From sequence record LR756500.1: a stretch of 64,000 nt of DNA, one strand, 5' to 3'. Under the pieces are notes generated by a model. That model saw only the letters and a program-made list of their open reading frames with translations. It did not search any database and had not been told where the DNA came from. Positions 4,681 to 59,908 of the stretch are shown here, piece by piece. Made by a program: the position numbers and the translations under genes. Numbering within the stretch: the first letter of the stretch is position 1; the number at the start of each line of letters is the position of its first letter.

Positions 4681-4885
4681 ATTCTATATATAAATAATAT
4701 GATATTATCGTAAATAAAACCCAAAATAAAACATGATACAGATGTATCATAGTAGGTAAAAACGGCAAAGAAAGTGTTTGTAAAATTACTTCACTTACAC
4801 CAATTACTAACCACTTATTAAAAATACCTTTCTTCTTCCAAAAGTTTTTTAATTTATTCCAATAATAATTAAATTCTTTAATCAT
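4658..4885 (-). CDS. Small membrane protein
   Basis: Two hydrophobic segments. Confidence 0.5.
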   Translation of the reverse strand: MIKEFNYYWNKLKNFWKKKGIFNKWLVIGVSEVILQTLSLPFLPTMIHLYHVLFWVLFTIISYYLYIEYERRRGN

Positions 4886-5279: not shown

Positions 5280-6098
5280 TTAATATCTTATTGTAAATAA
5301 AGAATAATCTATTTTATAATCTTTATAATATTCTTTAAATATTGGTAAATTTTCTAATTTTAAATTATCTAAATTTTTAAATTCATTTTTTTCTATTAAT
5401 CTTAAATCTATATTATTATATTCTAATACTTTATTCATTTTATAAATATCTCTATCTTTCATCCAGCCTTTTACTTCGATATAAATGTTAAAGTCAGGTA
5501 AATAAAAATCTGATGTATAAAACCTATTATTTAAATATTTTAATCTTTTTCTTTCCCAATAGATATTATTACTAGTTAACCATTCTGCAACTTTCTTTTC
5601 CCAGGTCCCTTGTACTTTAATATTAAATTTACCATTAAATACTTCATACCATAAAGTATGATGATCACCGTTATTTTCTAAAAATTTTATTCTACCTCTA
5701 CTTATAGATTCTTTATGTTTTTCAGTTAATGATATACCTATTCTCCGTTTAGTTGCACCTATAGATAATTTATTTCTATATTCTTTAGCCTTTTCTTTTC
5801 CTAATGCTTCTTCTAAAGTTCTTCCCTTTCTCCAAATCCATCCGTTAGTTGTAATACATCTTTTAATAGGTTCTTTCCCATTTCTATGAATTAAACAAAA
5901 TGAAAAATGTCCATTTAATGATTGTGCTTTTTCAAACTCTTTACCACATTCACATATATAAATATTTTTATCAACTATAAAATACTTACTTTTTTTCTTA
6001 ATAGCCTTTAAAATTATATCAAACTTATCACATTTAAATCCATATGTTGATAATCCTCTTTGTGTTTTAAATTCTTTTCCACAATTACACTTAAACAT
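5280..6098 (-). CDS. Free-standing PD-(D/E)xK endonuclease with Zn-finger and NUMOD3-like DNA-binding repeats
   Basis: C.CGKEF repeats, EKHKESIS, QGTWE..VA.WL, YTSDFYLPD.NIYIEVKGW. Confidence 0.75.
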   Translation of the reverse strand: MFKCNCGKEFKTQRGLSTYGFKCDKFDIILKAIKKKSKYFIVDKNIYICECGKEFEKAQSLNGHFSFCLIHRNGKEPIKRCITTNGWIWRKGRTLEEALGKEKAKEYRNKLSIGATKRRIGISLTEKHKESISRGRIKFLENNGDHHTLWYEVFNGKFNIKVQGTWEKKVAEWLTSNNIYWERKRLKYLNNRFYTSDFYLPDFNIYIEVKGWMKDRDIYKMNKVLEYNNIDLRLIEKNEFKNLDNLKLENLPIFKEYYKDYKIDYSLFTIRY

Positions 6099-6160
6099 AA
6101 TGATATTTTTATTTTATATATCATTATATCTAGTCTAAACCAATTACCATTATGACCTTG

Positions 6161-13307: not shown

Positions 13308-14087
13308 TTAATTATCGAAAAATCCGAAATCACTTGAATTTTTTAAATGTTCATATTTATCTTTAAACCAGTTTGGAAAAAATTTCCAATTTTTATCATT
13401 TATATTGTTTATAAATTTTAAATTTTTAGATAAAATATCATCTAAATCTTTCCAAATATTTTTATTTTTATTTATTAATTTAGTATCAAATTCTAATGTA
13501 TCTTTTTCAAACATTGTATAATTTTTTCCTAAATCAAAAATTTTACGTATTTTATCTCCATCTTTATGATATTCTAATAAAGCAAAAAATAATCTACCTA
13601 AACTATTAAATTCTTCTGAATTTCCTACACCATTAGAATCTTCTATATCACCAGAATATAAAGCAGGATTACTAGTATTACTTGCTTCACATACAACATA
13701 TCTTATAGGAATATTTATTAAAAAATTATCATTAAATATATCATTTAAATTATCAACTCCACTAATATTATAATACTGATATCCTTTAAGAGATGGTAAA
13801 ATAGCAATTATAATTCTATAATCATCATTTTTTAAAAAAATTGGTGATACATCTGTTATATCACCTTCTTCCTTTAAATATTTAGTTGACCAATATTCTA
13901 ATTCAATACTTATAATATTAATATCATTACCGTGTTTAGATTCATAATTTTTAACTAAATGTTGAAATATTTCAATAACTATATCACCTTTAGCATTGTT
14001 ATATAAAATTTTACTAATTTCAGGGTATGGATTTCCATATGATTTACCTTCATTTAAAAAACTAATATAATCTTTAATAAATTTCAT
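13308..14087 (-). CDS. Hypothetical protein, possibly virion-associated
   Basis: MKFIKDYISFLNE N-terminus resembles T4-like head-internal proteins. Confidence 0.6.
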   Translation of the reverse strand: MKFIKDYISFLNEGKSYGNPYPEISKILYNNAKGDIVIEIFQHLVKNYESKHGNDINIISIELEYWSTKYLKEEGDITDVSPIFLKNDDYRIIIAILPSLKGYQYYNISGVDNLNDIFNDNFLINIPIRYVVCEASNTSNPALYSGDIEDSNGVGNSEEFNSLGRLFFALLEYHKDGDKIRKIFDLGKNYTMFEKDTLEFDTKLINKNKNIWKDLDDILSKNLKFINNINDKNWKFFPNWFKDKYEHLKNSSDFGFFDN

Positions 14088-14100
14088 TAATTATTTTATT

Positions 14101-14334
14101 TTATATATTTTCTTTTTTAGCTCTTAAAATTTTTGGTATAAATTCTTCATTAATATTTTTGCAATCTGCACATCTAAAACCTGGTATAGGTAAATTTTCC
14201 TTTTTACCTGTTCCTGATTGTAAAATAGATGCAATTTTAATTATATAAATTTGTTCAAATACATCACTACCACATTTTGAACAAACTGCATTAGGCATAT
14301 TTGGAATTTCATTTTTAATTGTTAATTGATTCAT
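14101..14334 (-). CDS. Small Zn-binding protein
   Basis: CSKCG...FRCADC. Confidence 0.6.
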   Translation of the reverse strand: MNQLTIKNEIPNMPNAVCSKCGSDVFEQIYIIKIASILQSGTGKKENLPIPGFRCADCKNINEEFIPKILRAKKENI

Positions 14335-51471: not shown

Positions 51472-51746
51472 CTTGCTCCAGTTAAATCTTCAATTAATTG
51501 TTCAAAATCTAAACATATTGATTGTAATTTAGTTTTAACCATACTATGTGTTTCAGAATAATTATTTATTACTTCATTTTCATTATATAGTGTTTTTGTA
51601 ATATCAATCATTCCATTTTCTCTAACTGTAACAAAAATATCTGAATTAATTTCACAACACCATATTGTTTCCATATCAGTTAATTCAAATTTTTTATCTA
51701 ATCTATTTTCTAATAAACTTTTTAATCTTATTGCTGATAGTTCCAT
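51462..51746 (-). CDS. Hypothetical protein
   Basis: 94-aa ORF. Confidence 0.55.
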   Translation of the reverse strand: MELSAIRLKSLLENRLDKKFELTDMETIWCCEINSDIFVTVRENGMIDITKTLYNENEVINNYSETHSMVKTKLQSICLDFEQLIEDLTGARWN

Positions 51747-51757
51747 ATAAATATATT

Positions 51758-52144
51758 TTAAATTAAAAGATTTCTAGCTATAGAAGATGCATCTTGTCCA
51801 TTATACTGACCTACATATTTATTATTTAGAAAACTCATTATTTTTCCTATAGAATTTTTACCAATTAAATTAGAATTAGATATTTCTTGTTTAATTATTT
51901 CTTCTAATTGTTCTTTTTCTAATAATTTAGGTAGATATTCCTTTAAATATATATTCTCATGTTCACAGTGCGTAATTTCATTATTTTCAACCATTTTTTT
52001 AATAATTCTTATTACATCACTATCACTTGGATCTTTAGATTCTCTATCTAATTCACCTATTAAAGTTCCTAATACTAATCTTTTTTCAGGCTGCTTATTT
52101 ATCATAGCCTGTTTACGATCATCAATTATTTTTTCTTTTAACAT
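51758..52144 (-). CDS. GatB/YqeY-like protein (second copy)
   Basis: I..D.K.AM..K......L..LIGE, E..YL.EYLP..L, G.IM..L...Y.GQ..G. Confidence 0.82.
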   Translation of the reverse strand: MLKEKIIDDRKQAMINKQPEKRLVLGTLIGELDRESKDPSDSDVIRIIKKMVENNEITHCEHENIYLKEYLPKLLEKEQLEEIIKQEISNSNLIGKNSIGKIMSFLNNKYVGQYNGQDASSIARNLLI

Positions 52145-52148
52145 ATTT

Positions 52149-53381
52149 TTATTTTAGAGATTTTTTTAATTCTTTTAAATCATTAATATACATTTCTTTA
52201 GGAATTAATTTTTTAGTTTCAATTAATTCTGCCTTTTTAATTTCAAACTGATTCATTAATTCATCATATTTTTCTTTTGTTAATGAATGAATAGCCATTG
52301 ACAATAAATAAGAATAAGAATCATCAATTTTATCAAATTTTAACTTACTTAATGATTCAATTATTTTATCTTTAGGAACTTTATTAACTTTAATTTCATT
52401 ATCTATTATTCCCTTTATAAAGCGTGCTTTGTTAGATAATATTTTAACTTCATATTCTGATTTATCGATTAGATAATCTTTTCTTTTTTGATAGTAATTT
52501 AATCTAAAATCAACAAAATATTGAACTATATCTTTAGCAGATTTAAATATTTTAAGCTTTCCTGTTTCATCAAGAGTTGTTAAATTTTCAGTTTCATATT
52601 CTTGTAGCTTAAATAAATCTTCAATTTTTTCCTTTTTAAGGAAAGTCGCTAAATTTGTTCTAGAAAATTTAATTTCATAATTTATATTTTGTGAACAATT
52701 ATCTTCATATGAAGCTATTTCTTTTTTTGCTAATTTAGAATTTAAATGTTTTTCATATTTTTCATATGTTGTGCTAGGTGGTAATTCTGATATAATTATT
52801 GTACTTGTATTTGTTACTGCATATTTTCCTTCAAATATCCACCTGTTAGATTTTTCTTCATCTTTATAAATGCCTCCTGTAAAATCTTTAATCCATGGTG
52901 GTAATTCTCTAATTTTTTTACTATCTAAATGATCAAGACATGCATCAATTAATGTTTTTGGATTTCTATTTAATATATTTGTTGCAAATCCTACAGCAAT
53001 TCCTGAACTTCCATTTAATAATACAGTCGGTATTATGGGTAAGAAGAAATTCGGTTCAATTTCATTTCCTTCTTCTATTTTAGATTCTAATAATTCGAAA
53101 TCTTTATATAATAATCTAAAATTAGGATGTAACCTAGTTGATATATATCTAGGAGCTCCTGCTTCGGGAGATCTTAAACTACCAAATTGTCCAATTTCAT
53201 CTAGTAGTGGCATAGAATTTTTATAAGATTGTGCCATTCCTATAATTGCTTGATTTAATGCTGAATTATGAACTACTATTTTAGATTTACCTACTACAAA
53301 ACTTTCATATTCAGGAACTGATATATCATAATATTTTTTAGGTTCATTTAAAATATTAATTTTTATACTCTTTATTTTCAT
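52149..53381 (-). CDS. gyrA: Type II topoisomerase A subunit (gp52/GyrA-like), C-terminal fragment preceded by a 39-aa split-intein C part
   Basis: MKIKSIK...YDISV....F......VVHN|S, then AIIGMAQ, GQFGS, APRY (catalytic Tyr), PTVLLNG..GIAVGFATNI; no GyrA pinwheel CTD. Confidence 0.92.
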   Translation of the reverse strand: MKIKSIKINILNEPKKYYDISVPEYESFVVGKSKIVVHNSALNQAIIGMAQSYKNSMPLLDEIGQFGSLRSPEAGAPRYISTRLHPNFRLLYKDFELLESKIEEGNEIEPNFFLPIIPTVLLNGSSGIAVGFATNILNRNPKTLIDACLDHLDSKKIRELPPWIKDFTGGIYKDEEKSNRWIFEGKYAVTNTSTIIISELPPSTTYEKYEKHLNSKLAKKEIASYEDNCSQNINYEIKFSRTNLATFLKKEKIEDLFKLQEYETENLTTLDETGKLKIFKSAKDIVQYFVDFRLNYYQKRKDYLIDKSEYEVKILSNKARFIKGIIDNEIKVNKVPKDKIIESLSKLKFDKIDDSYSYLLSMAIHSLTKEKYDELMNQFEIKKAELIETKKLIPKEMYINDLKELKKSLK

Positions 53382-54280
53382 ATATTTTCATTTATAAAAT
53401 CAATACATAGTTTATAATTTTCTTCAATAGATTCTGTATCCCATATAACTAAAACTTTAAAATTATTTAATTTTGCTAATTGTATTTTTTCTTCAAATAT
53501 TTTTAAATATTTTTTATATCCTTCTTTAGTCATTGGATGATACCATTTATTTAATTTGTTAATATATCTATAATCTGGATGCCATCTACATCCATTAAAT
53601 TCTATTATTAATTTTTTTGTTTTAATTGTTAAATCATAGAAAAAATAACTATTATTTTTTCTTTCTAAATAAAATTCATTTTTATTTTTATTACTATCTC
53701 CATAATAAATATCATAAGTATTAATACTTTTATCGGTTATTAAATAATTTATAACTTTACTAAAAACTTTCATAGAAGCATTAGAAGCATTAGAATTAAA
53801 AGGTTTATAATACCCATTTCTTTTTATTAATATATTTTTAACTTTTAATTTTACTTCTTCTATTTGACCTGGATTAATAATTCCTTCTCCATATCTTTCT
53901 GTAAANNNNNNNNNNNNNNNNNNNNNTACTTTATCTCTTTGAAAAACATTTACAATTCCCTCAGTTTCTAATAATTTATTTTCCCAATTAATTCTAGATT
54001 TAGAGTTTTTAGAAAAATTATGTTTAGTTCCACAACTTTTGATATATCCAAGTTTTTTATTTTCATCTCCACATTTTTTAGAACAAGTTTCTTCACCATT
54101 TTTATTAAAATATTCTTTATCACATATTTTACACTTTTGATATTTTCTACATTTAGAACATTTAGTTGAATATAAATTTAAATCTTTTTCAATATATTTT
54201 AAACTTATAAATTTATTATTATATTCTTTATTACATCTTTTACATATTAAATTTTCATTTTTAATTTCTTTTAAATCCAT
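53378..54280 (-). CDS. Vsr-like (EDxHD) homing endonuclease; contains a 21-N assembly gap (53906-53926)
   Basis: FFYDL......IIEFNG.RWH...K...A...F.VL.IW; CKIC/TCSKKC Zn motifs. Confidence 0.8.
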   Translation of the reverse strand: MDLKEIKNENLICKRCNKEYNNKFISLKYIEKDLNLYSTKCSKCRKYQKCKICDKEYFNKNGEETCSKKCGDENKKLGYIKSCGTKHNFSKNSKSRINWENKLLETEGIVNVFQRDKVXXXXXXXFTERYGEGIINPGQIEEVKLKVKNILIKRNGYYKPFNSNASNASMKVFSKVINYLITDKSINTYDIYYGDSNKNKNEFYLERKNNSYFFYDLTIKTKKLIIEFNGCRWHPDYRYINKLNKWYHPMTKEGYKKYLKIFEEKIQLAKLNNFKVLVIWDTESIEENYKLCIDFINENI

Positions 54281-54331
54281 GTTTTATTTTATATATTAAC
54301 ATAAATTTAAGCTTTTTATTAGCATGAAGAC

Positions 54332-54871
54332 TTAGGTTAAATAAGATATAATATCATCACCTTCTTTTAAGTCTTTTACATATTTCCAAATATTACCTTT
54401 TAATAAAAATGGATGATACTCGGTAAATTTAAATATTTCGCCATTTTCCATTTCTATTTCGTATTCTTTATCTGTAATTTGACCTATACGTGCATTGCAT
54501 CCTTCAGCAATAACAAATTTATTATTAATATCATCAAATGCGATTATATTCATTTTTTTATTAGGGTAGTTTTCAGCCCATTCACCAATTTTAATATAAC
54601 TACCGTCTTCTAATAAAATAGGAGTATCATAATCCCCGCAGTCACCATGATGATAAAAAGCTTCTGCAGATACTTTACCTCCTAATTGAAATACTTTTAA
54701 AGGTTTTTCTTTACCTGTCTTCCAAATTTTATTTGCAATAAAAACTATTTTTCTTGCTGTAGGTTTTAACCCATCAATTACGGATGGAATTGCTCTATGT
54801 TCAACTACGTATTGTGCATACTCTAAATAATCTTCATCACAATATTGTGATATTGTTTTATTATTTACCAT
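54332..54871 (-). CDS. gyrA: Type II topoisomerase A subunit, N-terminal fragment + 102-aa split-intein N part
   Basis: RAIPSVIDGLKPTARK, YHHGD|CGDYDT.I, block B FT.YHPF, W..VKDLK.GD.I. Confidence 0.92.
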   Translation of the reverse strand: MVNNKTISQYCDEDYLEYAQYVVEHRAIPSVIDGLKPTARKIVFIANKIWKTGKEKPLKVFQLGGKVSAEAFYHHGDCGDYDTPILLEDGSYIKIGEWAENYPNKKMNIIAFDDINNKFVIAEGCNARIGQITDKEYEIEMENGEIFKFTEYHPFLLKGNIWKYVKDLKEGDDIISYLT

Positions 54872-54879
54872 AAATGTGT

Positions 54880-55614
54880 TTAAAATAAAGCTGTTTCTAA
54901 AATTAAAGGTTCACCTAATATTTTTTCTTTTCGTTCATCAGATTCCCCAGCAAACCAAGCTGATAATGTACTTTGATATTCTCCATCCTTTGTAATTTTT
55001 ATTACTTTAGGATTTTTTAATATTTCTTCATACTCATAATCTTCCAATGAAGCTAATCCCTTTTTATATTCTACATTCCAACTTTTAACATCTTTAATAG
55101 AATGCTCCCATTTATCATATTCATCTTGAGTATAAAAATAATTTATAGCAGTTCCTTTTTTAGTTACAACTAACGGAGTCATAACTTTATATATTTTTTC
55201 CTGCTCGAATAATTCTGGCCAATATTTTGCAAAGAAATGTATTAATGCGCCTGCAATAGCATTACCATCTGGATCAGCATCTGTATAAATATATAATTTT
55301 CCATATCTTAATCCAGCAGGTACTTCACCTAATTTTAATCCTACTGCGCCCATTAAACCTAATACTTCTTCGTTTTTAATTACTTTAGCATTAGTTAATT
55401 CACTTACATTAATAAATTTACCTTTTAATGGAAAAGCTCCAAACTTTTGAGAATCTCTAAATTTACGTACGGCTGAAAGGGCTGAATTGTGTGAAATAAT
55501 TCCATTAGATAAAATAAAACTCTCATCTTCATCTATTGCTATATCGACGACATTTTTATATCCATTATCTTTAATATACTCTATATCACATAATTCTAAA
55601 AAATTATTTTCCAT
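54880..55614 (-). CDS. gyrB: Type II topoisomerase B subunit TOPRIM fragment preceded by a 43-aa split-intein C part
   Basis: VVDIAI....SFILSNGIISHN|SA, FPLKGK, LRYGK..I.TDAD.DG..I, YKKGLAS. Confidence 0.92.
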   Translation of the reverse strand: MENNFLELCDIEYIKDNGYKNVVDIAIDEDESFILSNGIISHNSALSAVRKFRDSQKFGAFPLKGKFINVSELTNAKVIKNEEVLGLMGAVGLKLGEVPAGLRYGKLYIYTDADPDGNAIAGALIHFFAKYWPELFEQEKIYKVMTPLVVTKKGTAINYFYTQDEYDKWEHSIKDVKSWNVEYKKGLASLEDYEYEEILKNPKVIKITKDGEYQSTLSAWFAGESDERKEKILGEPLILETALF

Positions 55615-56725
55615 ATTTACTAATCTTTTCTATTAATTCATTAATATTAATACTACATTTACCTTTTTTTCCTAAGTTTACTTTAGCATCAACTAAAGCT
55701 AAATTTTCAATATGACCTATTATATTAGGACTAATCATATTTAAAAATCCAAATTTAATACTTATCATATGATCTAGATGTAACTTATTTTCCTTTTTAT
55801 ATTTTTTCCATTCTACACCAAATTTTGCTTTTCCACCTATTAATAAATTATAGTTGGTTTCATCCCATACTAATTGTGAATATATTAAATATTCATATTT
55901 TTTATCTTTAGGAATTAATTCGTATCCTTTTTCAATTAATGAAATAAGTCTATTTGATGTTCTTTTATTTATTAATTTTAACCCTTTATCAATTCCGTAT
56001 TTATCTATATAATCTTCATTAGAAGAAGAGCAGGTTGCTTTCCAATGTTCTAATTTAATAGTAGCATCATCTACACCATATTTATTTATCAAATTTGTTA
56101 GTGTTATTGCTTTTTTAGCACATAGTTGTTTCCACAAATCTTCACCGCTATCTCCATAATTATCTAAATAATATTGTTTACTGTTACTATATTTACTTTT
56201 TTTACAAAAATCTTCATATTTGTAAATTCCTTGTTCTTCTCCATATTTAGTAATAAAATATTTTTTATTTCTACTTTGACTTTTTTTATAGTCATCATAA
56301 TTTTTATGATTAATTAAATAAAATGGTGACTTATTATTTTTATGAATATAATCTAATGCTTCATTTTTATTTAAATTTAAAGTTAACGAAATAAATTCAG
56401 CAGAATTAGAATTCATTTTTAAGCCAGGACAATTTAAATTTTTTCCATAACAATAATTTTTATTATAATTACCGGTTCTCTTACCATATTGTATATTTGA
56501 AATAAATACTTGATTATCTTTAATATCAAATTCTAAATAAAAATTATGATTGTATTCTTTATTACATATATTACATTTTTTAATTTTAAATCCTAAACTT
56601 ATTAAATAATTAATTAAATTTATATTATTTTTAATTAACAACTTTTTAACAACGGCTCCAATTAATTCTATTTTAGAAGATTTAAAATATTTTTTTTCAT
56701 TATTTATTATGATATAATATTGCAT
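55604..56725 (-). CDS. HNH homing endonuclease with KYG repeats
   Basis: Four (K/N)YG repeats; C-terminal HLDH.IS......G...NL......N..K. Confidence 0.75.
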   Translation of the reverse strand: MQYYIIINNEKKYFKSSKIELIGAVVKKLLIKNNINLINYLISLGFKIKKCNICNKEYNHNFYLEFDIKDNQVFISNIQYGKRTGNYNKNYCYGKNLNCPGLKMNSNSAEFISLTLNLNKNEALDYIHKNNKSPFYLINHKNYDDYKKSQSRNKKYFITKYGEEQGIYKYEDFCKKSKYSNSKQYYLDNYGDSGEDLWKQLCAKKAITLTNLINKYGVDDATIKLEHWKATCSSSNEDYIDKYGIDKGLKLINKRTSNRLISLIEKGYELIPKDKKYEYLIYSQLVWDETNYNLLIGGKAKFGVEWKKYKKENKLHLDHMISIKFGFLNMISPNIIGHIENLALVDAKVNLGKKGKCSININELIEKISKYGK

Positions 56726-56739
56726 ATGTTTTATTTTAT

Positions 56740-56775
56740 ATATTTGAAGGCTACTAGTACTTTTCCTTCAAATAT
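56740..56775. other. 11-bp hairpin overlapping the gyrB-N stop codon and the promoter-like motif of the HNH gene
   Basis: ATATTTGAAGG (56740-56750) / CCTTCAAATAT (56765-56775). Confidence 0.5.
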
Positions 56776-58558
56776 GTAGAACGTTAACGAAAAACATTAT
56801 ATCTTTATTTATTTCTGTAATATCTAACATTTTTATTTCATTTGTAATTATATTAAATATTGCCAATTTTGTATTAACAGTTATTAATAATTCATCATTT
56901 TTTAAAATAATTTTATATTTAAATTTTTTATCATTTATTTCAATAATATCCAATATTTCATCAAGTGATTTTAAATATATTAATTTATTTTTAACAAATT
57001 GATGATATTCTATATTTATATCTTTAACTTGTACCCAATCAAATAAATTATTTCTTTTATCATATAAATAAAAAGCGTGCTTTTCAGTAGGTTCAATTAT
57101 ACCTACTCCTTTTATTTTTATTTGTTTAACTTTTTCTATTCTTTTTGATATTTGGTTTACATCACGTAATCTATTTTTATGAGTAATTACAGTATCTGTT
57201 ATTTTTAAATCTTTTATTTTTATATCTTCTAAAAATGAGTCTCTTAATACTTTTACAAATGTATTTTCTTCTAAACATAGTCCCTCGAATATTCCTAATA
57301 TACAATGATTTCTTTGTCCTTTTGCTTTTGCATCAATTAATTTTTCAACTTTAGTAGAAGATAAATTTTTATTTAATTTTCTTAATTCTCTTCTTTCTTC
57401 TGCAGATTTTTTCTTTTCTAACCAATCTAAAACATTTTTAACTATATCAGATTCAAATACTGCCTTCATAAAGGTATCTGATACTATATGTTCTGTACCA
57501 AAATCTATTTGAGCTGTTATAAGTTTTTCCTTTGTTTGGGATCCAAATGAACTATTAATAACAGTAGCATTAACAAATAAAAACATATATTGTTTTAGTT
57601 CTGATGGTTTAACATCTATTTTATATTTCTTTTGTATTTTATCTCGTAACCAATTTATTATTTGATTAATTATATAATCAACATGAGTTCCACCTTCCTT
57701 TGTTTCAACTGAATTAACAAATGAAACGTGTCTATAACCATCTTTTGATAATCCTAACCCTATTTGCCAATCTTTTGATTTTTCGTAAAATACATGTGGA
57801 ACATATAATTCAGTATATTTATGAAAATCAGAATATTTTAATAATTTTTCATTTAAATATATTTTAAGATTAGGATTACAGGCTGCAATATCTATTAATC
57901 GTTTTGTTATAATATCTTTACTAATTTCATCTATACCTATTTTTAACATTCCAAATTTATCTAAATCTGGATAATAAATTATTTCAGTATAATGTTTTGT
58001 AGTGGTTTTAATAATAGGATTAGATCGTTTACGCATGTTTTCAGTAAATTCCTGTTCAAATGATTTTTCACCATCTGCAGTTTTAACAATAAACTTTTTA
58101 CTAAAAATATTTGTAAGTGTTGCTCCTTCACCGTGCAAGCCTGCTCCTGTTCGATCATCAACATCATTAAAATTACTGCCTGCTTTTAATTCAGAAAATA
58201 ACATTTCCGGTATATAAATATTTTCTACTGGATGTATTTCTACTGGAATTCCACCATTATCCCATATTGATATAAAATTTTCAGTTGTATTAATTGTAAC
58301 TTTAATTGTATTTAATAGTGAATCTTTATTTTTGAATTCATCAACTGAATTTGAAATAATTTCATCAAATAATTTCAAAAATCCAGGATTGAATGTAATA
58401 TCGTAAAGTTCAAATTTTTGAGAATCTTCATCAAATAAATATGATTCTCTTTTATGAAATGAAGTAGATCCAATATATCGTCCAGGTCTTAAAAGAACAT
58501 GATCTACATCATCTAATTTTTTGTATTTATTTGCTAAAAAATCTTTTGATTTTTTCAT
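56768..58558 (-). CDS. gyrB: Type II topoisomerase B subunit ATPase fragment + 169-aa split-intein N part
   Basis: HVLLRPG.YIGS, FDEII.NSVDE, WDNG.GIP, GSNF.D, G.HG.GA, KL.DA, EGL|CL.ENT.V, block B T.KH.F. Confidence 0.93.
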   Translation of the reverse strand: MKKSKDFLANKYKKLDDVDHVLLRPGRYIGSTSFHKRESYLFDEDSQKFELYDITFNPGFLKLFDEIISNSVDEFKNKDSLLNTIKVTINTTENFISIWDNGGIPVEIHPVENIYIPEMLFSELKAGSNFNDVDDRTGAGLHGEGATLTNIFSKKFIVKTADGEKSFEQEFTENMRKRSNPIIKTTTKHYTEIIYYPDLDKFGMLKIGIDEISKDIITKRLIDIAACNPNLKIYLNEKLLKYSDFHKYTELYVPHVFYEKSKDWQIGLGLSKDGYRHVSFVNSVETKEGGTHVDYIINQIINWLRDKIQKKYKIDVKPSELKQYMFLFVNATVINSSFGSQTKEKLITAQIDFGTEHIVSDTFMKAVFESDIVKNVLDWLEKKKSAEERRELRKLNKNLSSTKVEKLIDAKAKGQRNHCILGIFEGLCLEENTFVKVLRDSFLEDIKIKDLKITDTVITHKNRLRDVNQISKRIEKVKQIKIKGVGIIEPTEKHAFYLYDKRNNLFDWVQVKDINIEYHQFVKNKLIYLKSLDEILDIIEINDKKFKYKIILKNDELLITVNTKLAIFNIITNEIKMLDITEINKDIMFFVNVLHI

Positions 58559-58690
58559 ATAGAAAATATAAAATATTAAATATTAAATTTATATGCTAAT
58601 ATAATAATAAAGTTTCAAAAATAAAACGATAGAAATAAAAAAAGCCACATAATTTTCATTATATAGCTTTTTTTAATTTTTTAAAACTTA

Positions 58691-59908
58691 TTATTTTTTG
58701 ATTCCTAAATCAAGACTTAAATCATTTGCATATTTAACAGTCATGAAATCTACTAATTTATTTGCTCCATTACTATTGCCTTGAGATTCACCCATTACTA
58801 TATTTGGTACCCAATTTCCTGTATATCCTTTAACAGCATCAGCCCAATATTTTTGTACATTTTCATATGTTTCTAATTTTTGCTTTAGAGCACCATCTGC
58901 TTGCATTACTAATCTTTTATAAGTTGCTTCTCCCTCACCACGTAGTGTTTGTTCTTTCTTATAGTATTCAGCTTCTTCTGCACCTAATCTTGCTACTTCT
59001 TTTGTTTGTTCAGCTTCAGTTACCATTTTAGCTTTTATAACCTCTTGATCCCATTTAGCTTTAGCTGCAGATGCTTTACCTTCTTCTTCTACTTTAATAG
59101 CATTTTGTTCAGCTTTCTTTGTTTCAGCAATAGCTGTTTGAACATCCATTATAGCCTTTTGTTGAGCTTTAATTTGTTGATCAACTACTTCATCATATAC
59201 AATTTTATTAATAGATAAATTATAAATACCGATACCTATATCAGCAAGAGGTGATTCACCTTGTCTTTTAAGAGTATTAGCAGTTGTATCTTTAACTATT
59301 TCTACAACAGTAACAGTCTTTTCTTTTCCAGATAATGGATCTATACCTTTAACTTCTTTAGTAGTTGTTTTATAAACTCCATATGCTGCTTGATCATCTA
59401 TAAATGACAATAAATCATTTCTACGTTCAGCATAAGATTCTTTTGAACTCATTAATGGGCCTGTCATATAAACAGATTTTTCTATTACTGTTCTAATTAA
59501 TTGTTGTTCTACTGCTTCTTGTGAACCATATAACATATGAATTTTACTCATATTAGTCTCATCCATTGGTAATTTAAAACGAATACTACCTGAAATTTTA
59601 GCATGCCCACCATCATTAAAACGAATTTTAATACTTTGATCTGCAGCACTACCTTGATCAACTGCAGATGAAAACCAATACTGTGATTCTTTTTTGTAAT
59701 GTTGTGCTGTACCAAAATTTTGATACTTTAAACCTGGCGAAAAATAGAAATGTAATTCTCCGTCAACTGGATCTTGTATTACTACAATTTCATCGGCATC
59801 TACACTTTCAACTATACTGCCTGAAAGTGCAATTAATACTATTGCGGCAATTGCAAATAAAACGAGGAAAAATAATTTTGTTCCTCTGGGTTTGATTGAA
59901 TCTGTCAT
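58691..59908 (-). CDS. SPFH / band 7 / prohibitin-family membrane protein
   Basis: N-terminal TM helix, VVIQ...G.L, I.F.DGG.A.ISG..R, Ala/Glu-rich coiled-coil tail. Confidence 0.88.
   Translation of the reverse strand: MTDSIKPRGTKLFFLVLFAIAAIVLIALSGSIVESVDADEIVVIQDPVDGELHFYFSPGLKYQNFGTAQHYKKESQYWFSSAVDQGSAADQSIKIRFNDGGHAKISGSIRFKLPMDETNMSKIHMLYGSQEAVEQQLIRTVIEKSVYMTGPLMSSKESYAERRNDLLSFIDDQAAYGVYKTTTKEVKGIDPLSGKEKTVTVVEIVKDTTANTLKRQGESPLADIGIGIYNLSINKIVYDEVVDQQIKAQQKAIMDVQTAIAETKKAEQNAIKVEEEGKASAAKAKWDQEVIKAKMVTEAEQTKEVARLGAEEAEYYKKEQTLRGEGEATYKRLVMQADGALKQKLETYENVQKYWADAVKGYTGNWVPNIVMGESQGNSNGANKLVDFMTVKYANDLSLDLGIKK

What the first reader, a model, noticed from the sequence alone, without database searches (positions are those of the whole stretch)
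54880..58558. Topoisomerase II B subunit fractured by a naturally split intein with an HNH gene in between
The ATPase ORF ends ...GIFEGL|CLEENTFVKV (Cys codon 57275-57277), followed by a 169-aa intein N part with a TxxH block B. The TOPRIM ORF begins with a 43-aa intein C part ending ISHN|S. Splicing would restore the EGxSA TOPRIM motif (EGLSA). An HNH endonuclease ORF (55604-56725) separates the halves, the known 'fractured gene' arrangement, which I know mainly from gp41, nrd, dnaE, IMPDH and terminase genes. The N part is unusually long and seems to carry a degenerate second block-B-like segment.
Basis: partly seen in the sequence, partly recalled or inferred. Interest (0 to 1): 0.8.

Follow-up and report, generated by a model that had tools for sequence, protein, structure and literature searches.

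The report
Split-intein fractured phage topoisomerase II gene
A huge groundwater phage encodes its topoisomerase II large subunit as two genes joined at the protein level by a naturally split intein, with a homing-endonuclease gene between them; this is a known arrangement in a host protein I found no report for, and its N-terminal intein half carries a conserved, duplicated extra module.

Summary
On the minus strand, ORF1 (58558..56768) is the GHKL ATPase and transducer part plus a 169-aa intein N half starting at Cys428. After a 42-nt spacer comes a 373-aa HNH-like ORF. It overlaps ORF3 (55614..54880) by 11 nt. ORF3 is a 43-aa intein C half (..ISHN|S) plus TOPRIM. One topoisomerase profile is matched at positions 18-444 by ORF1 and 445-636 by ORF3. 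Related huge phages have the uninterrupted gene (FEGDSA). The catalytic residues Cys1, TEKH, His-Asn and Ser+1 are present. A complex prediction supports N/C pairing (0.67, best control 0.00). At least 62 metagenomic protein clusters share the architecture. A contiguous mini-intein allele and an allele with a decayed endonuclease also exist. So this is a genuine "fractured gene" in the sense of Dassa 2009.

Three things look unreported in the papers I could search: the host protein and site, the HNH-type endonuclease, and the long N half. Its last ~70 residues are an old duplication of the block-B module (hhalign 97.9%). They are conserved family-wide and fold on their own, and their role is unknown. 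The topoisomerase medium-subunit gene just downstream is fractured in the same way. Splicing itself is untested.

The parts
57278..58558 (-). N-extein: topoisomerase II large subunit (gp39/GyrB-like), GHKL ATPase plus transducer, residues 1-427, ending ...GIFEGL
   Evidence: phrog_543 E 2e-116, profile 18-444. GyrB/ParE NCBIfam models. 53% identity to residues 6-418/419 of the uninterrupted homologues L001 and L002.
56978..57277 (-). Intein N half, canonical core (intein residues 1-100): Cys1 (57277-57275), N2 motif D28-x-V-x-T-H33, block B T64-E-K-H67 (57088-57077)
   Evidence: In the 61-sequence family alignment Cys1 is present in 56 of 61 (Thr in 5) and His67 in 61 of 61. The interface with the C half uses about residues 1-100. 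Residues 1-99 of the AF2 model align to the Ssp DnaE intein 5ol5_C with Z 5.6, rmsd 2.9 A over 91 residues.
56771..56977 (-). Intein N half, extra C-terminal tail (intein residues 101-169): a linker strand plus B' (118-165, 56783-56926), a degenerate duplicate of the block-B module. Stop codon TGA at 56770-56768
   Evidence: hhalign of tail against core gives probability 97.9%, E 5.8e-13. The family motif is S/T133 in 57 of 61 and His136 in 54 of 61; the window has Thr136. AF2 pLDDT is 93-98 here, and the tail aligns separately to small beta modules. These residues are not listed among the confident IntC contacts in the predicted complex (the tool warns that an unlisted residue is uncertain, not shown to be out of contact).
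56737..56778 (-). RNA hairpin (11-bp core stem) that encloses the stop codon of the N-half ORF, at the start of the 42-nt spacer
   Evidence: MFE -11.2 kcal/mol, z -1.7 in the window. Hairpins sit at the same position with different sequence in L004 (z -2.4) and L006 (z -4.6). Hairpins upstream of the endonuclease gene are described for fractured genes (PMC2677866).
56728..56744 (-). 17-mer AATATATAAAATAAAAC just upstream of the endonuclease ATG; it resembles the T4 late-promoter box TATAAATA
   Evidence: There are two exact copies in the window, one here and one at 54281-54297 before the second endonuclease gene. Promoter function was not tested.
55604..56725 (-). Free-standing homing-endonuclease gene, 373 aa: Cys-rich N-terminal and middle region plus a C-terminal HNH-like (beta-beta-alpha-Me) nuclease
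   Evidence: D318, H319, N341, N350 and K353 are invariant in 11 homologues. Orthologues of 376-387 aa with 43-54% identity sit at the same place in other contigs. Atlas neighbours are DUF7487, NUMOD3 and HNH. There is no NCBIfam or PDB sequence hit.
55486..55614 (-). Intein C half, 43 aa (MENNF...VVDIAIDEDESFILSNGIISHN). Its ATG lies inside the last 11 nt of the endonuclease ORF
   Evidence: TIGR01443 gives 21.7 bits against a cut-off of 15.6. All 18 family members end in SHN followed by SA. Residues 5-44 form the interface.
54883..55485 (-). C-extein: TOPRIM and C-terminal part of the large subunit, residues 44-244, starting with Ser+1 (SALSAVRKF...). Stop codon at 54882-54880
   Evidence: phrog_543 profile 445-636, E 1.9e-57. 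Aligns from residue 420 of L002.

Best explanation
This is a 'fractured' phage topoisomerase II large-subunit gene. An ancestral mini-intein sat between the Asp and Ser of the TOPRIM EGDSA motif. A free-standing homing-endonuclease gene invaded it at the usual endonuclease insertion point and broke the gene in two. ORF1 makes the ATPase-transducer part fused to the intein N half. ORF3 makes the intein C half fused to TOPRIM, and is probably translated by coupling to the overlapping endonuclease ORF. The two halves pair into a HINT domain. This class-1 domain (Cys1, TxxH, His-Asn, Ser+1) ligates the exteins in trans into a 628-aa enzyme reading ...FEGL-SALSA..., and releases the two intein pieces. 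The endonuclease is a selfish passenger that spreads the cassette to alleles lacking it, and it can decay without harm to the host gene. The N half also carries a ~70-aa tail made of an IntC-like strand plus a duplicate of the block-B module. I infer that it is a selected accessory module, perhaps aiding folding or solubility of the N half or timing its pairing. It is not part of the catalytic core. Shown here: the anatomy, the homology, the conservation and the predicted pairing. Inferred: splicing, translational coupling, homing and the role of the tail.
For: The extein junction is exact. Uninterrupted homologues exist in related huge phages. The C half is above the curated HMM cut-off. 25 of 61 N-half homologues hit TIGR01445. 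phmmer links the N half to contiguous inteins in other host proteins. Catalytic residues are conserved across the family: Cys1 (or Thr) in 61 of 61, His67 in 61 of 61, and HN|S in 18 of 18. The complex prediction gives ipSAE 0.67 against a best control of 0.00; 51 of 78 solved complexes and 2 of 108 mismatched pairs reach that mark. The runs agree in at least 93% of contacts and the partner pLDDT is at least 77. The evolutionary series is complete: a contiguous mini-intein at the same site (P0075), a split form with an intact endonuclease (window, L006, L007, L084, L087, L088), and a split form with a 56-codon endonuclease remnant (L004, L005). The spacer is 42 nt, the overlap is 11 nt and a hairpin is present, as published for fractured genes (PMC2677866). 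No RNA family matches, so nothing found supports an intron.
Against: No protein or RNA data exist; only DNA runs from groundwater metagenomes hold the sequence. The window's own N half fails the curated intein HMM. The -1 residue is Leu where relatives have the Asp of EGDSA, so the spliced enzyme departs from the consensus. Other family members carry D, L, M, F, Q, N, S, E or A at this position. The window's B' has lost the His that 54 of 61 relatives keep, so if the tail matters this copy may be impaired. Complex predictors can score known families from memory.
Confidence: 0.82

Rival explanations
1. The intein halves no longer splice. They act only as a tight non-covalent clamp, so the enzyme works as separate polypeptides, as T4 gp39/gp60 and Aeh1 NrdA-a/NrdA-b do through their tails.
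For: T4 topoisomerase II works with its large subunit split near this region by the mobA insertion, and Aeh1 NrdA is assembled through tails (PMC3045599, PMC11461880). The window's -1 residue is Leu and its B' module is degenerate.
Against: Every catalytic residue needed only for splicing is kept under strong conservation: Cys1, His67, and the terminal His-Asn plus Ser+1. The break lies inside the catalytic EGxSA loop, where an unremoved ~210-residue HINT domain would sit at the Mg/DNA-cleavage site.
Confidence: 0.1
2. The gene is inactivated. The endonuclease insertion killed the topoisomerase gene and the pieces are decaying pseudogenes.
For: Huge phages carry many selfish elements. A near-identical record has 6 intein C-terminal and 5 N-terminal HMM hits.
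Against: Both pieces are intact ORFs with 50-53% identity to functional-looking homologues. The same split is conserved in at least 62 clusters below 50% identity without frameshifts. The split persists where the endonuclease has decayed.
Confidence: 0.04
3. The break is an artefact or is healed at the RNA level, through misassembly, a group I intron carrying the endonuclease ORF, or recoding.
For: Related huge-phage lineages are rich in group I introns with HNH genes (PMC12880540).
Against: No Rfam family matches at E<=1 over 51500-59500. Removing the segment between the ORFs as RNA would leave the intein halves in frame, and those are HINT sequences, not intron. The same layout is found in many independent assemblies. 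Two runs listed under one sample hold 99% of the sampled words, but that sample may be the source of the assembly, so this is not independent support. The ORFs are open under code 11.
Confidence: 0.02

Closest known systems
Fractured genes with naturally split inteins (Dassa et al. 2009, PMC2677866): gp41, NrdA, NrdJ, IMPDH, DnaE, DNA ligase and terminase loci from GOS metagenomes
   Same: Three co-oriented ORFs: N-extein with IntN, a free-standing endonuclease, and IntC with C-extein. The spacer is short (27-51 nt published, 42 nt here). The endonuclease 3' end overlaps the IntC start (6-69 bp published, 11 bp here). A hairpin and a late-promoter-like box precede the endonuclease. The context is a phage. 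The break is at the usual endonuclease insertion point. The nucleophiles are Cys1 and Ser+1.
   Different: The host protein, topoisomerase II large subunit at EGD|SA, is not among the published hosts. The endonuclease is HNH-like, whereas only GIY-YIG and Vsr-like types were seen there and HNH was only predicted. IntN is 169 aa, not about 90-125 (that range is from my memory), because of a duplicated block-B module. Two adjacent subunit genes are both fractured.
T4 topoisomerase II gp39/gp60 split by the mobA insertion
   Same: The same enzyme is split in the TOPRIM region, and a mobile endonuclease gene lies at the break (PMC3045599, PMC11461880).
   Different: T4 has no intein. Its pieces stay separate and are held together by ~70 aa of tails. 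By the gp60-like profile phrog_7229, which starts at ORF3 residue 74, the T4 break point lies about 30 residues downstream of the site used here.
Contiguous GyrB and GyrA inteins of bacteria and archaea (for example the Ssp GyrB and Mxe GyrA inteins)
   Same: They are HINT inteins in type IIA topoisomerase subunits. GyrB and GyrA are recurrent intein hosts (PMC4760082).
   Different: Those inteins are single-chain and cellular. I could not verify with the tools that the known GyrB insertion site equals EGD|SA; I recall this only from memory.
Engineered caged split inteins ('intein zymogens'), in which a partial partner fragment is fused to an intein half (recalled from memory, not checked here)
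   Same: An intein half carries in cis an extra piece derived from HINT sequence. Here that piece is an IntC-like strand plus a block-B copy.
   Different: Here the extra piece is natural and conserved. It is predicted to fold as its own small beta module and does not occupy the IntC groove. No caging was shown.

Membership tests
Intein (HINT domain, class 1) | Nucleophile (Cys, Ser or Thr) as first intein residue, directly after the N-extein | tested here: met
   Cys428 of ORF1 follows the last extein-matching residue. The family has Cys in 56 of 61 and Thr in 5 of 61.
Intein (HINT domain, class 1) | Block B TxxH about 60-75 residues after residue 1 | tested here: met
   T64-E-K-H67. His is invariant (61 of 61) and Ser or Thr is present in 58 of 61.
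Intein (HINT domain, class 1) | Block G ending His-Asn, followed by a Cys, Ser or Thr +1 nucleophile | tested here: met
   ...GIISHN|S44. TIGR01443 gives 21.7 bits against a cut-off of 15.6. All 18 relatives end SHN|SA.
Intein (HINT domain, class 1) | N-terminal splicing region recognised by a curated profile (TIGR01445) | tested here: inconclusive
   The window's own copy has no hit at E<=0.1. 25 of 61 homologues hit, best E 2.8e-6. phmmer reaches contiguous inteins in other host proteins.
Intein (HINT domain, class 1) | HINT fold formed by the two halves | tested here: inconclusive
   The complex prediction gives 0.67 against controls at 0.00, with about 230 contacts between IntN 1-100 and IntC 5-44. 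IntN alone matches intein structures only at Z 5-6. No coordinates of the complex were available for a fold search.
Intein (HINT domain, class 1) | In-frame insertion whose removal restores a conserved host motif without a gap | tested here: met
   FEGL+SALSAVRKF aligns to FEGDSAAGAVRKY. phrog_543 profile positions run 444|445 across the break.
Intein (HINT domain, class 1) | Protein (trans-)splicing activity | not testable with these tools
   No proteomic or RNA data are available; only DNA runs hold the sequence.
Fractured gene (Dassa 2009) | Same-strand order of IntN piece, short spacer, free-standing endonuclease gene, IntC piece, with the endonuclease 3' end overlapping the IntC start | tested here: met
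   42-nt spacer and 11-nt overlap, against the published 27-51 nt and 6-69 bp.
Fractured gene (Dassa 2009) | Hairpin and late-promoter-like element upstream of the endonuclease gene | tested here: inconclusive
   A hairpin is present at the same position in three loci (z -1.7, -2.4 and -4.6). A TATA(T)AAAATA box is shared by both endonuclease genes. Function was not tested.
HNH (beta-beta-alpha-Me) homing endonuclease | Catalytic His (usually in a DH or HH pair) followed by conserved Asn and a final Asn or His within about 35 residues | tested here: met
   D318-H319 ... N341 ... N350..K353 are invariant in 11 homologues.
HNH (beta-beta-alpha-Me) homing endonuclease | Match to an HNH profile or to a solved HNH structure | tested here: not met
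   There is no NCBIfam hit and no PDB hit by sequence or profile. Only Atlas leads were found: HNH clusters at 0.86-0.87 and TM 0.45-0.49.
HNH (beta-beta-alpha-Me) homing endonuclease | Site-specific cleavage of the endonuclease-less allele (homing) | not testable with these tools
   This is inferred only from the patchy presence, decay and nuclease-domain swaps among alleles.

The most novel reading that the evidence does not exclude
The conserved ~70-aa tail of the N half, an IntC-like strand plus a second block-B module that keeps its (S/T)xxH in 54 of 61 clusters, is a functional built-in pseudo-partner. It would fold or shield the otherwise disordered N half and control when, or how fast, the true C half can engage. 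That would make it a natural counterpart of engineered 'caged' split inteins, born from a duplication during endonuclease invasion.
Probability: 0.2. Interest if true: 0.8.

Novelty: new variant of a known kind. Interest (0 to 1): 0.6.

Why it matters
Naturally split inteins are rare and are prized tools for protein ligation. This locus defines a large, previously undescribed family with Cys1 and Ser+1 nucleophiles: at least 62 clusters for the N half and 18 C-half proteins found here. It sits in an enzyme whose activity is easy to assay. The family preserves every stage of the proposed fracturing pathway: a contiguous mini-intein, a split form with an endonuclease, and a split form with a decayed endonuclease. 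It also shows endonucleases that keep one shared N-terminal and middle region (probably DNA-binding) while swapping HNH and Vsr-like nuclease domains. The duplicated HINT half-module on the N half is a structural feature I found no report of. If it modulates pairing or solubility, it could inform split-intein engineering. The locus also shows a type IIA topoisomerase encoded by four genes, two for each subunit, with an endonuclease gene between each pair. A 2024 structural paper calls T4's three-subunit enzyme the sole known case of more than two (PMC11461880).

Tried and rejected
- A word-indexed homologue search with the N half found only the protein itself. The exhaustive HMMER search was needed to find relatives.
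- phmmer of the N half against PDB gave only chance hits such as IL-13.
- AF2 of the N half without an alignment was useless, with pLDDT 34.
- Foldseek on the good model found nothing at E<=0.001. VIA alignments gave only Z 5-6 for each sub-module. The half alone is therefore not in a full HINT conformation, and the tail's fold assignment (AXH-like, riboflavin-synthase-barrel-like or half-HINT) is unresolved.
- I first read the tail as a decayed copy of the C half. hhalign gives that only 4% probability (E 0.0098) and limits it to the linker strand, whereas the block-B duplication gets 97.9%.
- I considered that the tail goes with the HNH type of endonuclease and rejected it. Tails occur next to PD-(D/E)xK-type endonucleases (L087, L088), and one tail-less N half occurs with a Vsr-like one (L084).
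- BLASTP between the two endonucleases of the window shows only a short shared Cys motif (E 0.01).
- The sigma-70 promoter scan is uninformative in this 22% GC DNA, with 56 sites found against 63 expected.
- The window's own assembly is not held, so I used a near-identical record, G001.
- Six literature searches found no report of a split intein in a phage topoisomerase II. That library lacks most subscription journals, so absence is not proof.
- I could not verify that the known bacterial GyrB intein site is the same site.
Full report
**Source and context**

The 3.7-kb stretch is 100% identical to LR756500.1, an unannotated 462-kb 'uncultured phage' genome. The only sequencing runs that hold it are groundwater metagenomes. 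The region has about 15-30% GC, and all genes discussed lie on the minus strand.

**Anatomy**

- ORF1 (58558..56768, 596 aa) matches the phage 'DNA topoisomerase II large subunit' family phrog_543 at profile positions 18-444 with its residues 2-426 (E 2e-116). It also matches GyrB/ParE models.
- Residue 428 is Cys (57277-57275). The remaining 169 residues match no topoisomerase profile.
- After the TGA stop comes a 42-nt spacer, then a 373-aa ORF (56725..55604).
- The last 11 nt of that ORF contain the ATG of ORF3 (55614..54880, 244 aa).
- ORF3 residues 43-232 match phrog_543 positions 445-636 (E 1.9e-57). Residues 24-44 match the curated intein C-terminal model TIGR01443 (21.7 bits, cut-off 15.6).
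- The profile is thus continued exactly, 444|445, across the break.

Two related huge phages, LR745206 and LR756502, encode the protein uninterrupted (614 and 615 aa...GIFEGDSAAGAVRKY...). The window's pieces, joined at Leu427/Ser44, align to them without a gap.

**Is it an intein?**

The class-1 signature is complete: Cys1, T64-E-K-H67 (block B), a C half ending in His42-Asn43, and Ser+1.

The window's N half misses TIGR01445 and has no PDB sequence match. An exhaustive HMMER search of 1.84 billion representatives nevertheless found 89 clusters at E<=1e-3.
- 62 clusters have the same architecture...EGx|C(T)..., then 140-200 residues to the end of the protein.
- The rest include contiguous inteins in other host proteins, for instance inside the GGSPC|F motif that I read as a cytosine-methyltransferase motif.
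- Of 61 aligned family members, 25 hit TIGR01445.
- His67 is invariant and Cys1 is present in 56 of 61, with Thr in the other 5.
- Eighteen C-half proteins all read ...SFxLSNGIISHN|SA.

A complex prediction of the N half (with 5 extein residues) and the C half supports pairing.
- The score is 0.67 in the median of three runs, with a best control of 0.00.
- 51 of 78 solved complexes and 2 of 108 mismatched pairs reach that mark.
- The runs agree in at least 93% of contacts, and the partner pLDDT is at least 77.
- The interface covers intein residues about 1-100 and C-half residues 5-44.

This supports likeness to known split inteins. It does not prove binding.

No Rfam family, including group I introns, matches at E<=1 across 51500-59500.

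**Evolutionary series**

- L006 and L007 (IMG/VR) repeat the window's layout, with a 380-aa orthologue of the endonuclease.
- L004 and L005 keep both intein halves. Between them lie only 204 nt, encoding a 56-codon remnant of the endonuclease C-terminus that still overlaps the C-half ATG.
- P0075 carries a contiguous ~148-aa mini-intein at the same site, with an almost identical block F/G (...HSFVLSNGIISHN|SA). Its contig folds back on itself further downstream, which is an assembly artefact beyond the intein.
- L084, L087, L088 and one more contig show the same fracture in more distant phages.

Invasion, fixation and decay of the endonuclease are therefore all represented. The split intein outlives the endonuclease, which argues that it is the functional solution.

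**The endonuclease**

Eleven homologues share invariant D318-H319...N341...N350..K353, the pattern of a beta-beta-alpha-Me (HNH) site. ESM-Atlas neighbours are DUF7487, NUMOD3 and HNH clusters. No curated profile or solved structure is matched, so 'HNH-like' is the honest label.

Its N-terminal and middle region (C-x2-C ... C-P-G-x-K-(L/M)-N-x-N-S ... NKSPFY) recurs in the intervening ORFs of L084, L087 and L088. Those end instead in Vsr-like or PD-(D/E)xK domains. One shared N-terminal and middle region, probably the DNA-binding part, has therefore been combined with different nucleases.

Dassa et al. saw only GIY-YIG and Vsr-like endonucleases in fractured genes and predicted that HNH could occur.

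**Expression signals**

A hairpin encloses the stop codon of ORF1 (56737-56778). Hairpins with different sequence sit at the same place in L004 and L006 (z -1.7, -2.4 and -4.6).

The 17-mer AATATATAAAATAAAAC precedes both endonuclease ATGs of the window and occurs nowhere else exactly. It resembles the T4 late box. These features match those described for fractured genes, but their function is untested.

**The long N half**

Published split N halves are about 90-125 aa (from memory). Here the N half is 169 aa.

- Profile-profile comparison of the family alignment shows that tail residues 118-165 are homologous to core residues 48-95, the block-B module (probability 97.9%, E 5.8e-13).
- Similarity of the tail to the C half is weak (E 0.0098) and confined to the linker strand.
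- The copy keeps the signature (S/T)xxH(K/R)-aromatic-x-V-aromatic-(D/N). Ser or Thr is present in 57 of 61 and His in 54 of 61.
- B scores against its own B' no better than against the B' of other sequences (31.6 against 29.9; the shuffled control is 1.4 +/- 8.2). This points to a single old duplication without later gene conversion.
- With the alignment, AF2 gives pLDDT 92.9 and pTM 0.58. Residues 1-99 align to intein N halves (5ol5_C: Z 5.6, rmsd 2.9 A, 91 residues).
- Residues 97-169 align separately to small beta modules: AXH at Z 5.2, and the IntC-plus-IntN part of the Npu SICLOPPS intein 5ol6_A at Z 5.4 over 105-169.
- The tail residues are not listed among the confident contacts with the C half, though the tool warns that an unlisted residue is uncertain rather than shown to be out of contact.
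- One tail-less split form (P0058, 101-aa N half) and the contiguous form show that the tail is not indispensable to the intein as such.

My inference is that a segment made of an IntC-like strand plus block B was duplicated when the cassette arrived, and has been kept as an accessory module. What it does is unknown.

**Comparison with known systems**

In kind this is a fractured gene with a naturally split intein (PMC2677866). What I found no report of:
- The host protein and site. Topoisomerase is not among the published hosts, and six literature searches found no report.
- The HNH-like endonuclease.
- The duplicated module on the N half.
- The tandem fracture of both subunits.

T4 solves a nearby break in the same enzyme without an intein, through ~70 aa of tails (PMC3045599, PMC11461880).

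**Verdict**

This is a new variant of a known kind. Splicing activity and the role of the tail need bench tests.

Noticed in passing
window 52149-54871 (-): The next gene, the topoisomerase II medium subunit (gp52/GyrA-like, phrog_551), is fractured in the same way. ORF 54871..54332 ends ...AFYHHGD|C78 and carries a 102-aa intein N half (TIGR01445, 38.7 bits). A 300-aa Vsr-like endonuclease ORF follows at 54280..53378. An ATGA overlap leads into ORF 53381..52149, which starts with a 39-aa intein C half ...IVVHN|S40 (TIGR01443, 27.2 bits). Relatives have the uninterrupted YHHGDSSLSNAI. The same double fracture is present in L004, L005 and L007 (in L006 the stored locus ends before that gene).
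   Followed up: partly
window 53906-53926: A 21-nt run of N lies inside the Vsr-like endonuclease ORF and gives 7 X codons. It was left as it is. Only the part downstream of it was used for a family search (phrog_22677).
   Followed up: no
window 54281-54297 and 56728-56744 (-); near-copies at 14093-14109 and 6106-6122 (-): The identical 17-mer AATATATAAAATAAAAC sits directly upstream of both endonuclease start codons. One-mismatch and two-mismatch copies precede ORFs 14087..13308 and 6098..5280. It may be a phage (late?) promoter box or the 5' end of the mobile cassettes.
   Followed up: partly
window 5280-6098 (-): A 272-aa ORF with two C-x-C...H...C zinc-finger-like motifs and a PD-(D/E)xK-type C-terminus (phrog_9019, phrog_945 'endonuclease', phrog_9084 'homing endonuclease'). 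It looks like another free-standing homing endonuclease, and it is preceded by the near-copy of the 17-mer.
   Followed up: partly
L006/L007 1-3036: A third fractured gene in relatives. A helicase-like protein (uninterrupted, 529 aa, in L004) is broken in its GTGKS motif (the P-loop by my reading). A Vsr-like endonuclease ORF overlaps a 651-aa ORF whose first ~160 residues end ...NGISNHN|TGKS. That is an unusually long intein C part, so the split may be atypical, with a short N half. The N piece lies off the contig.
   Followed up: no
L088 6402-7589: In a distant relative the TOPRIM piece carries, besides the split-intein C half, a second and contiguous mini-intein inside the DxD motif (FLTDAD|CITEEH...YILTHN|CDGSH). 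The same lineage has Thr instead of Cys as the first residue of the split intein (EGD|TI..., 5 of 61 clusters).
   Followed up: no
L004/L005 5797-6000 and 6752-7510: The endonuclease between the intein halves is reduced to a 56-codon remnant that keeps an ATG and the overlap with the C-half start, which may preserve translational coupling. A 252-aa paralogue with the same HNH-like C-terminus lies downstream of the TOPRIM gene.
   Followed up: partly
G001 (near-identical 429-kb virus record): The genome holds 6 intein C-terminal and 5 N-terminal HMM hits. One N/C pair lies in a single 577-aa frame and is a contiguous intein. Four pairs are 1.1-1.8 kb apart and are split or fractured. The phage is therefore riddled with fractured genes outside the window.
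   Followed up: partly
family alignment A1, residue -1: The residue before the intein, the Asp of EGDSA, is D in many clusters but L, M, F, Q, N, S, E or A in others. The spliced enzymes therefore differ at a position inside the catalytic TOPRIM loop.
   Followed up: no
L085 (contig of P0075): The contig carrying the contiguous mini-intein allele is a perfect fold-back, with its genes mirrored around about position 4769. This is an assembly or amplification artefact, and the protein is unreliable beyond about residue 617.
   Followed up: yes
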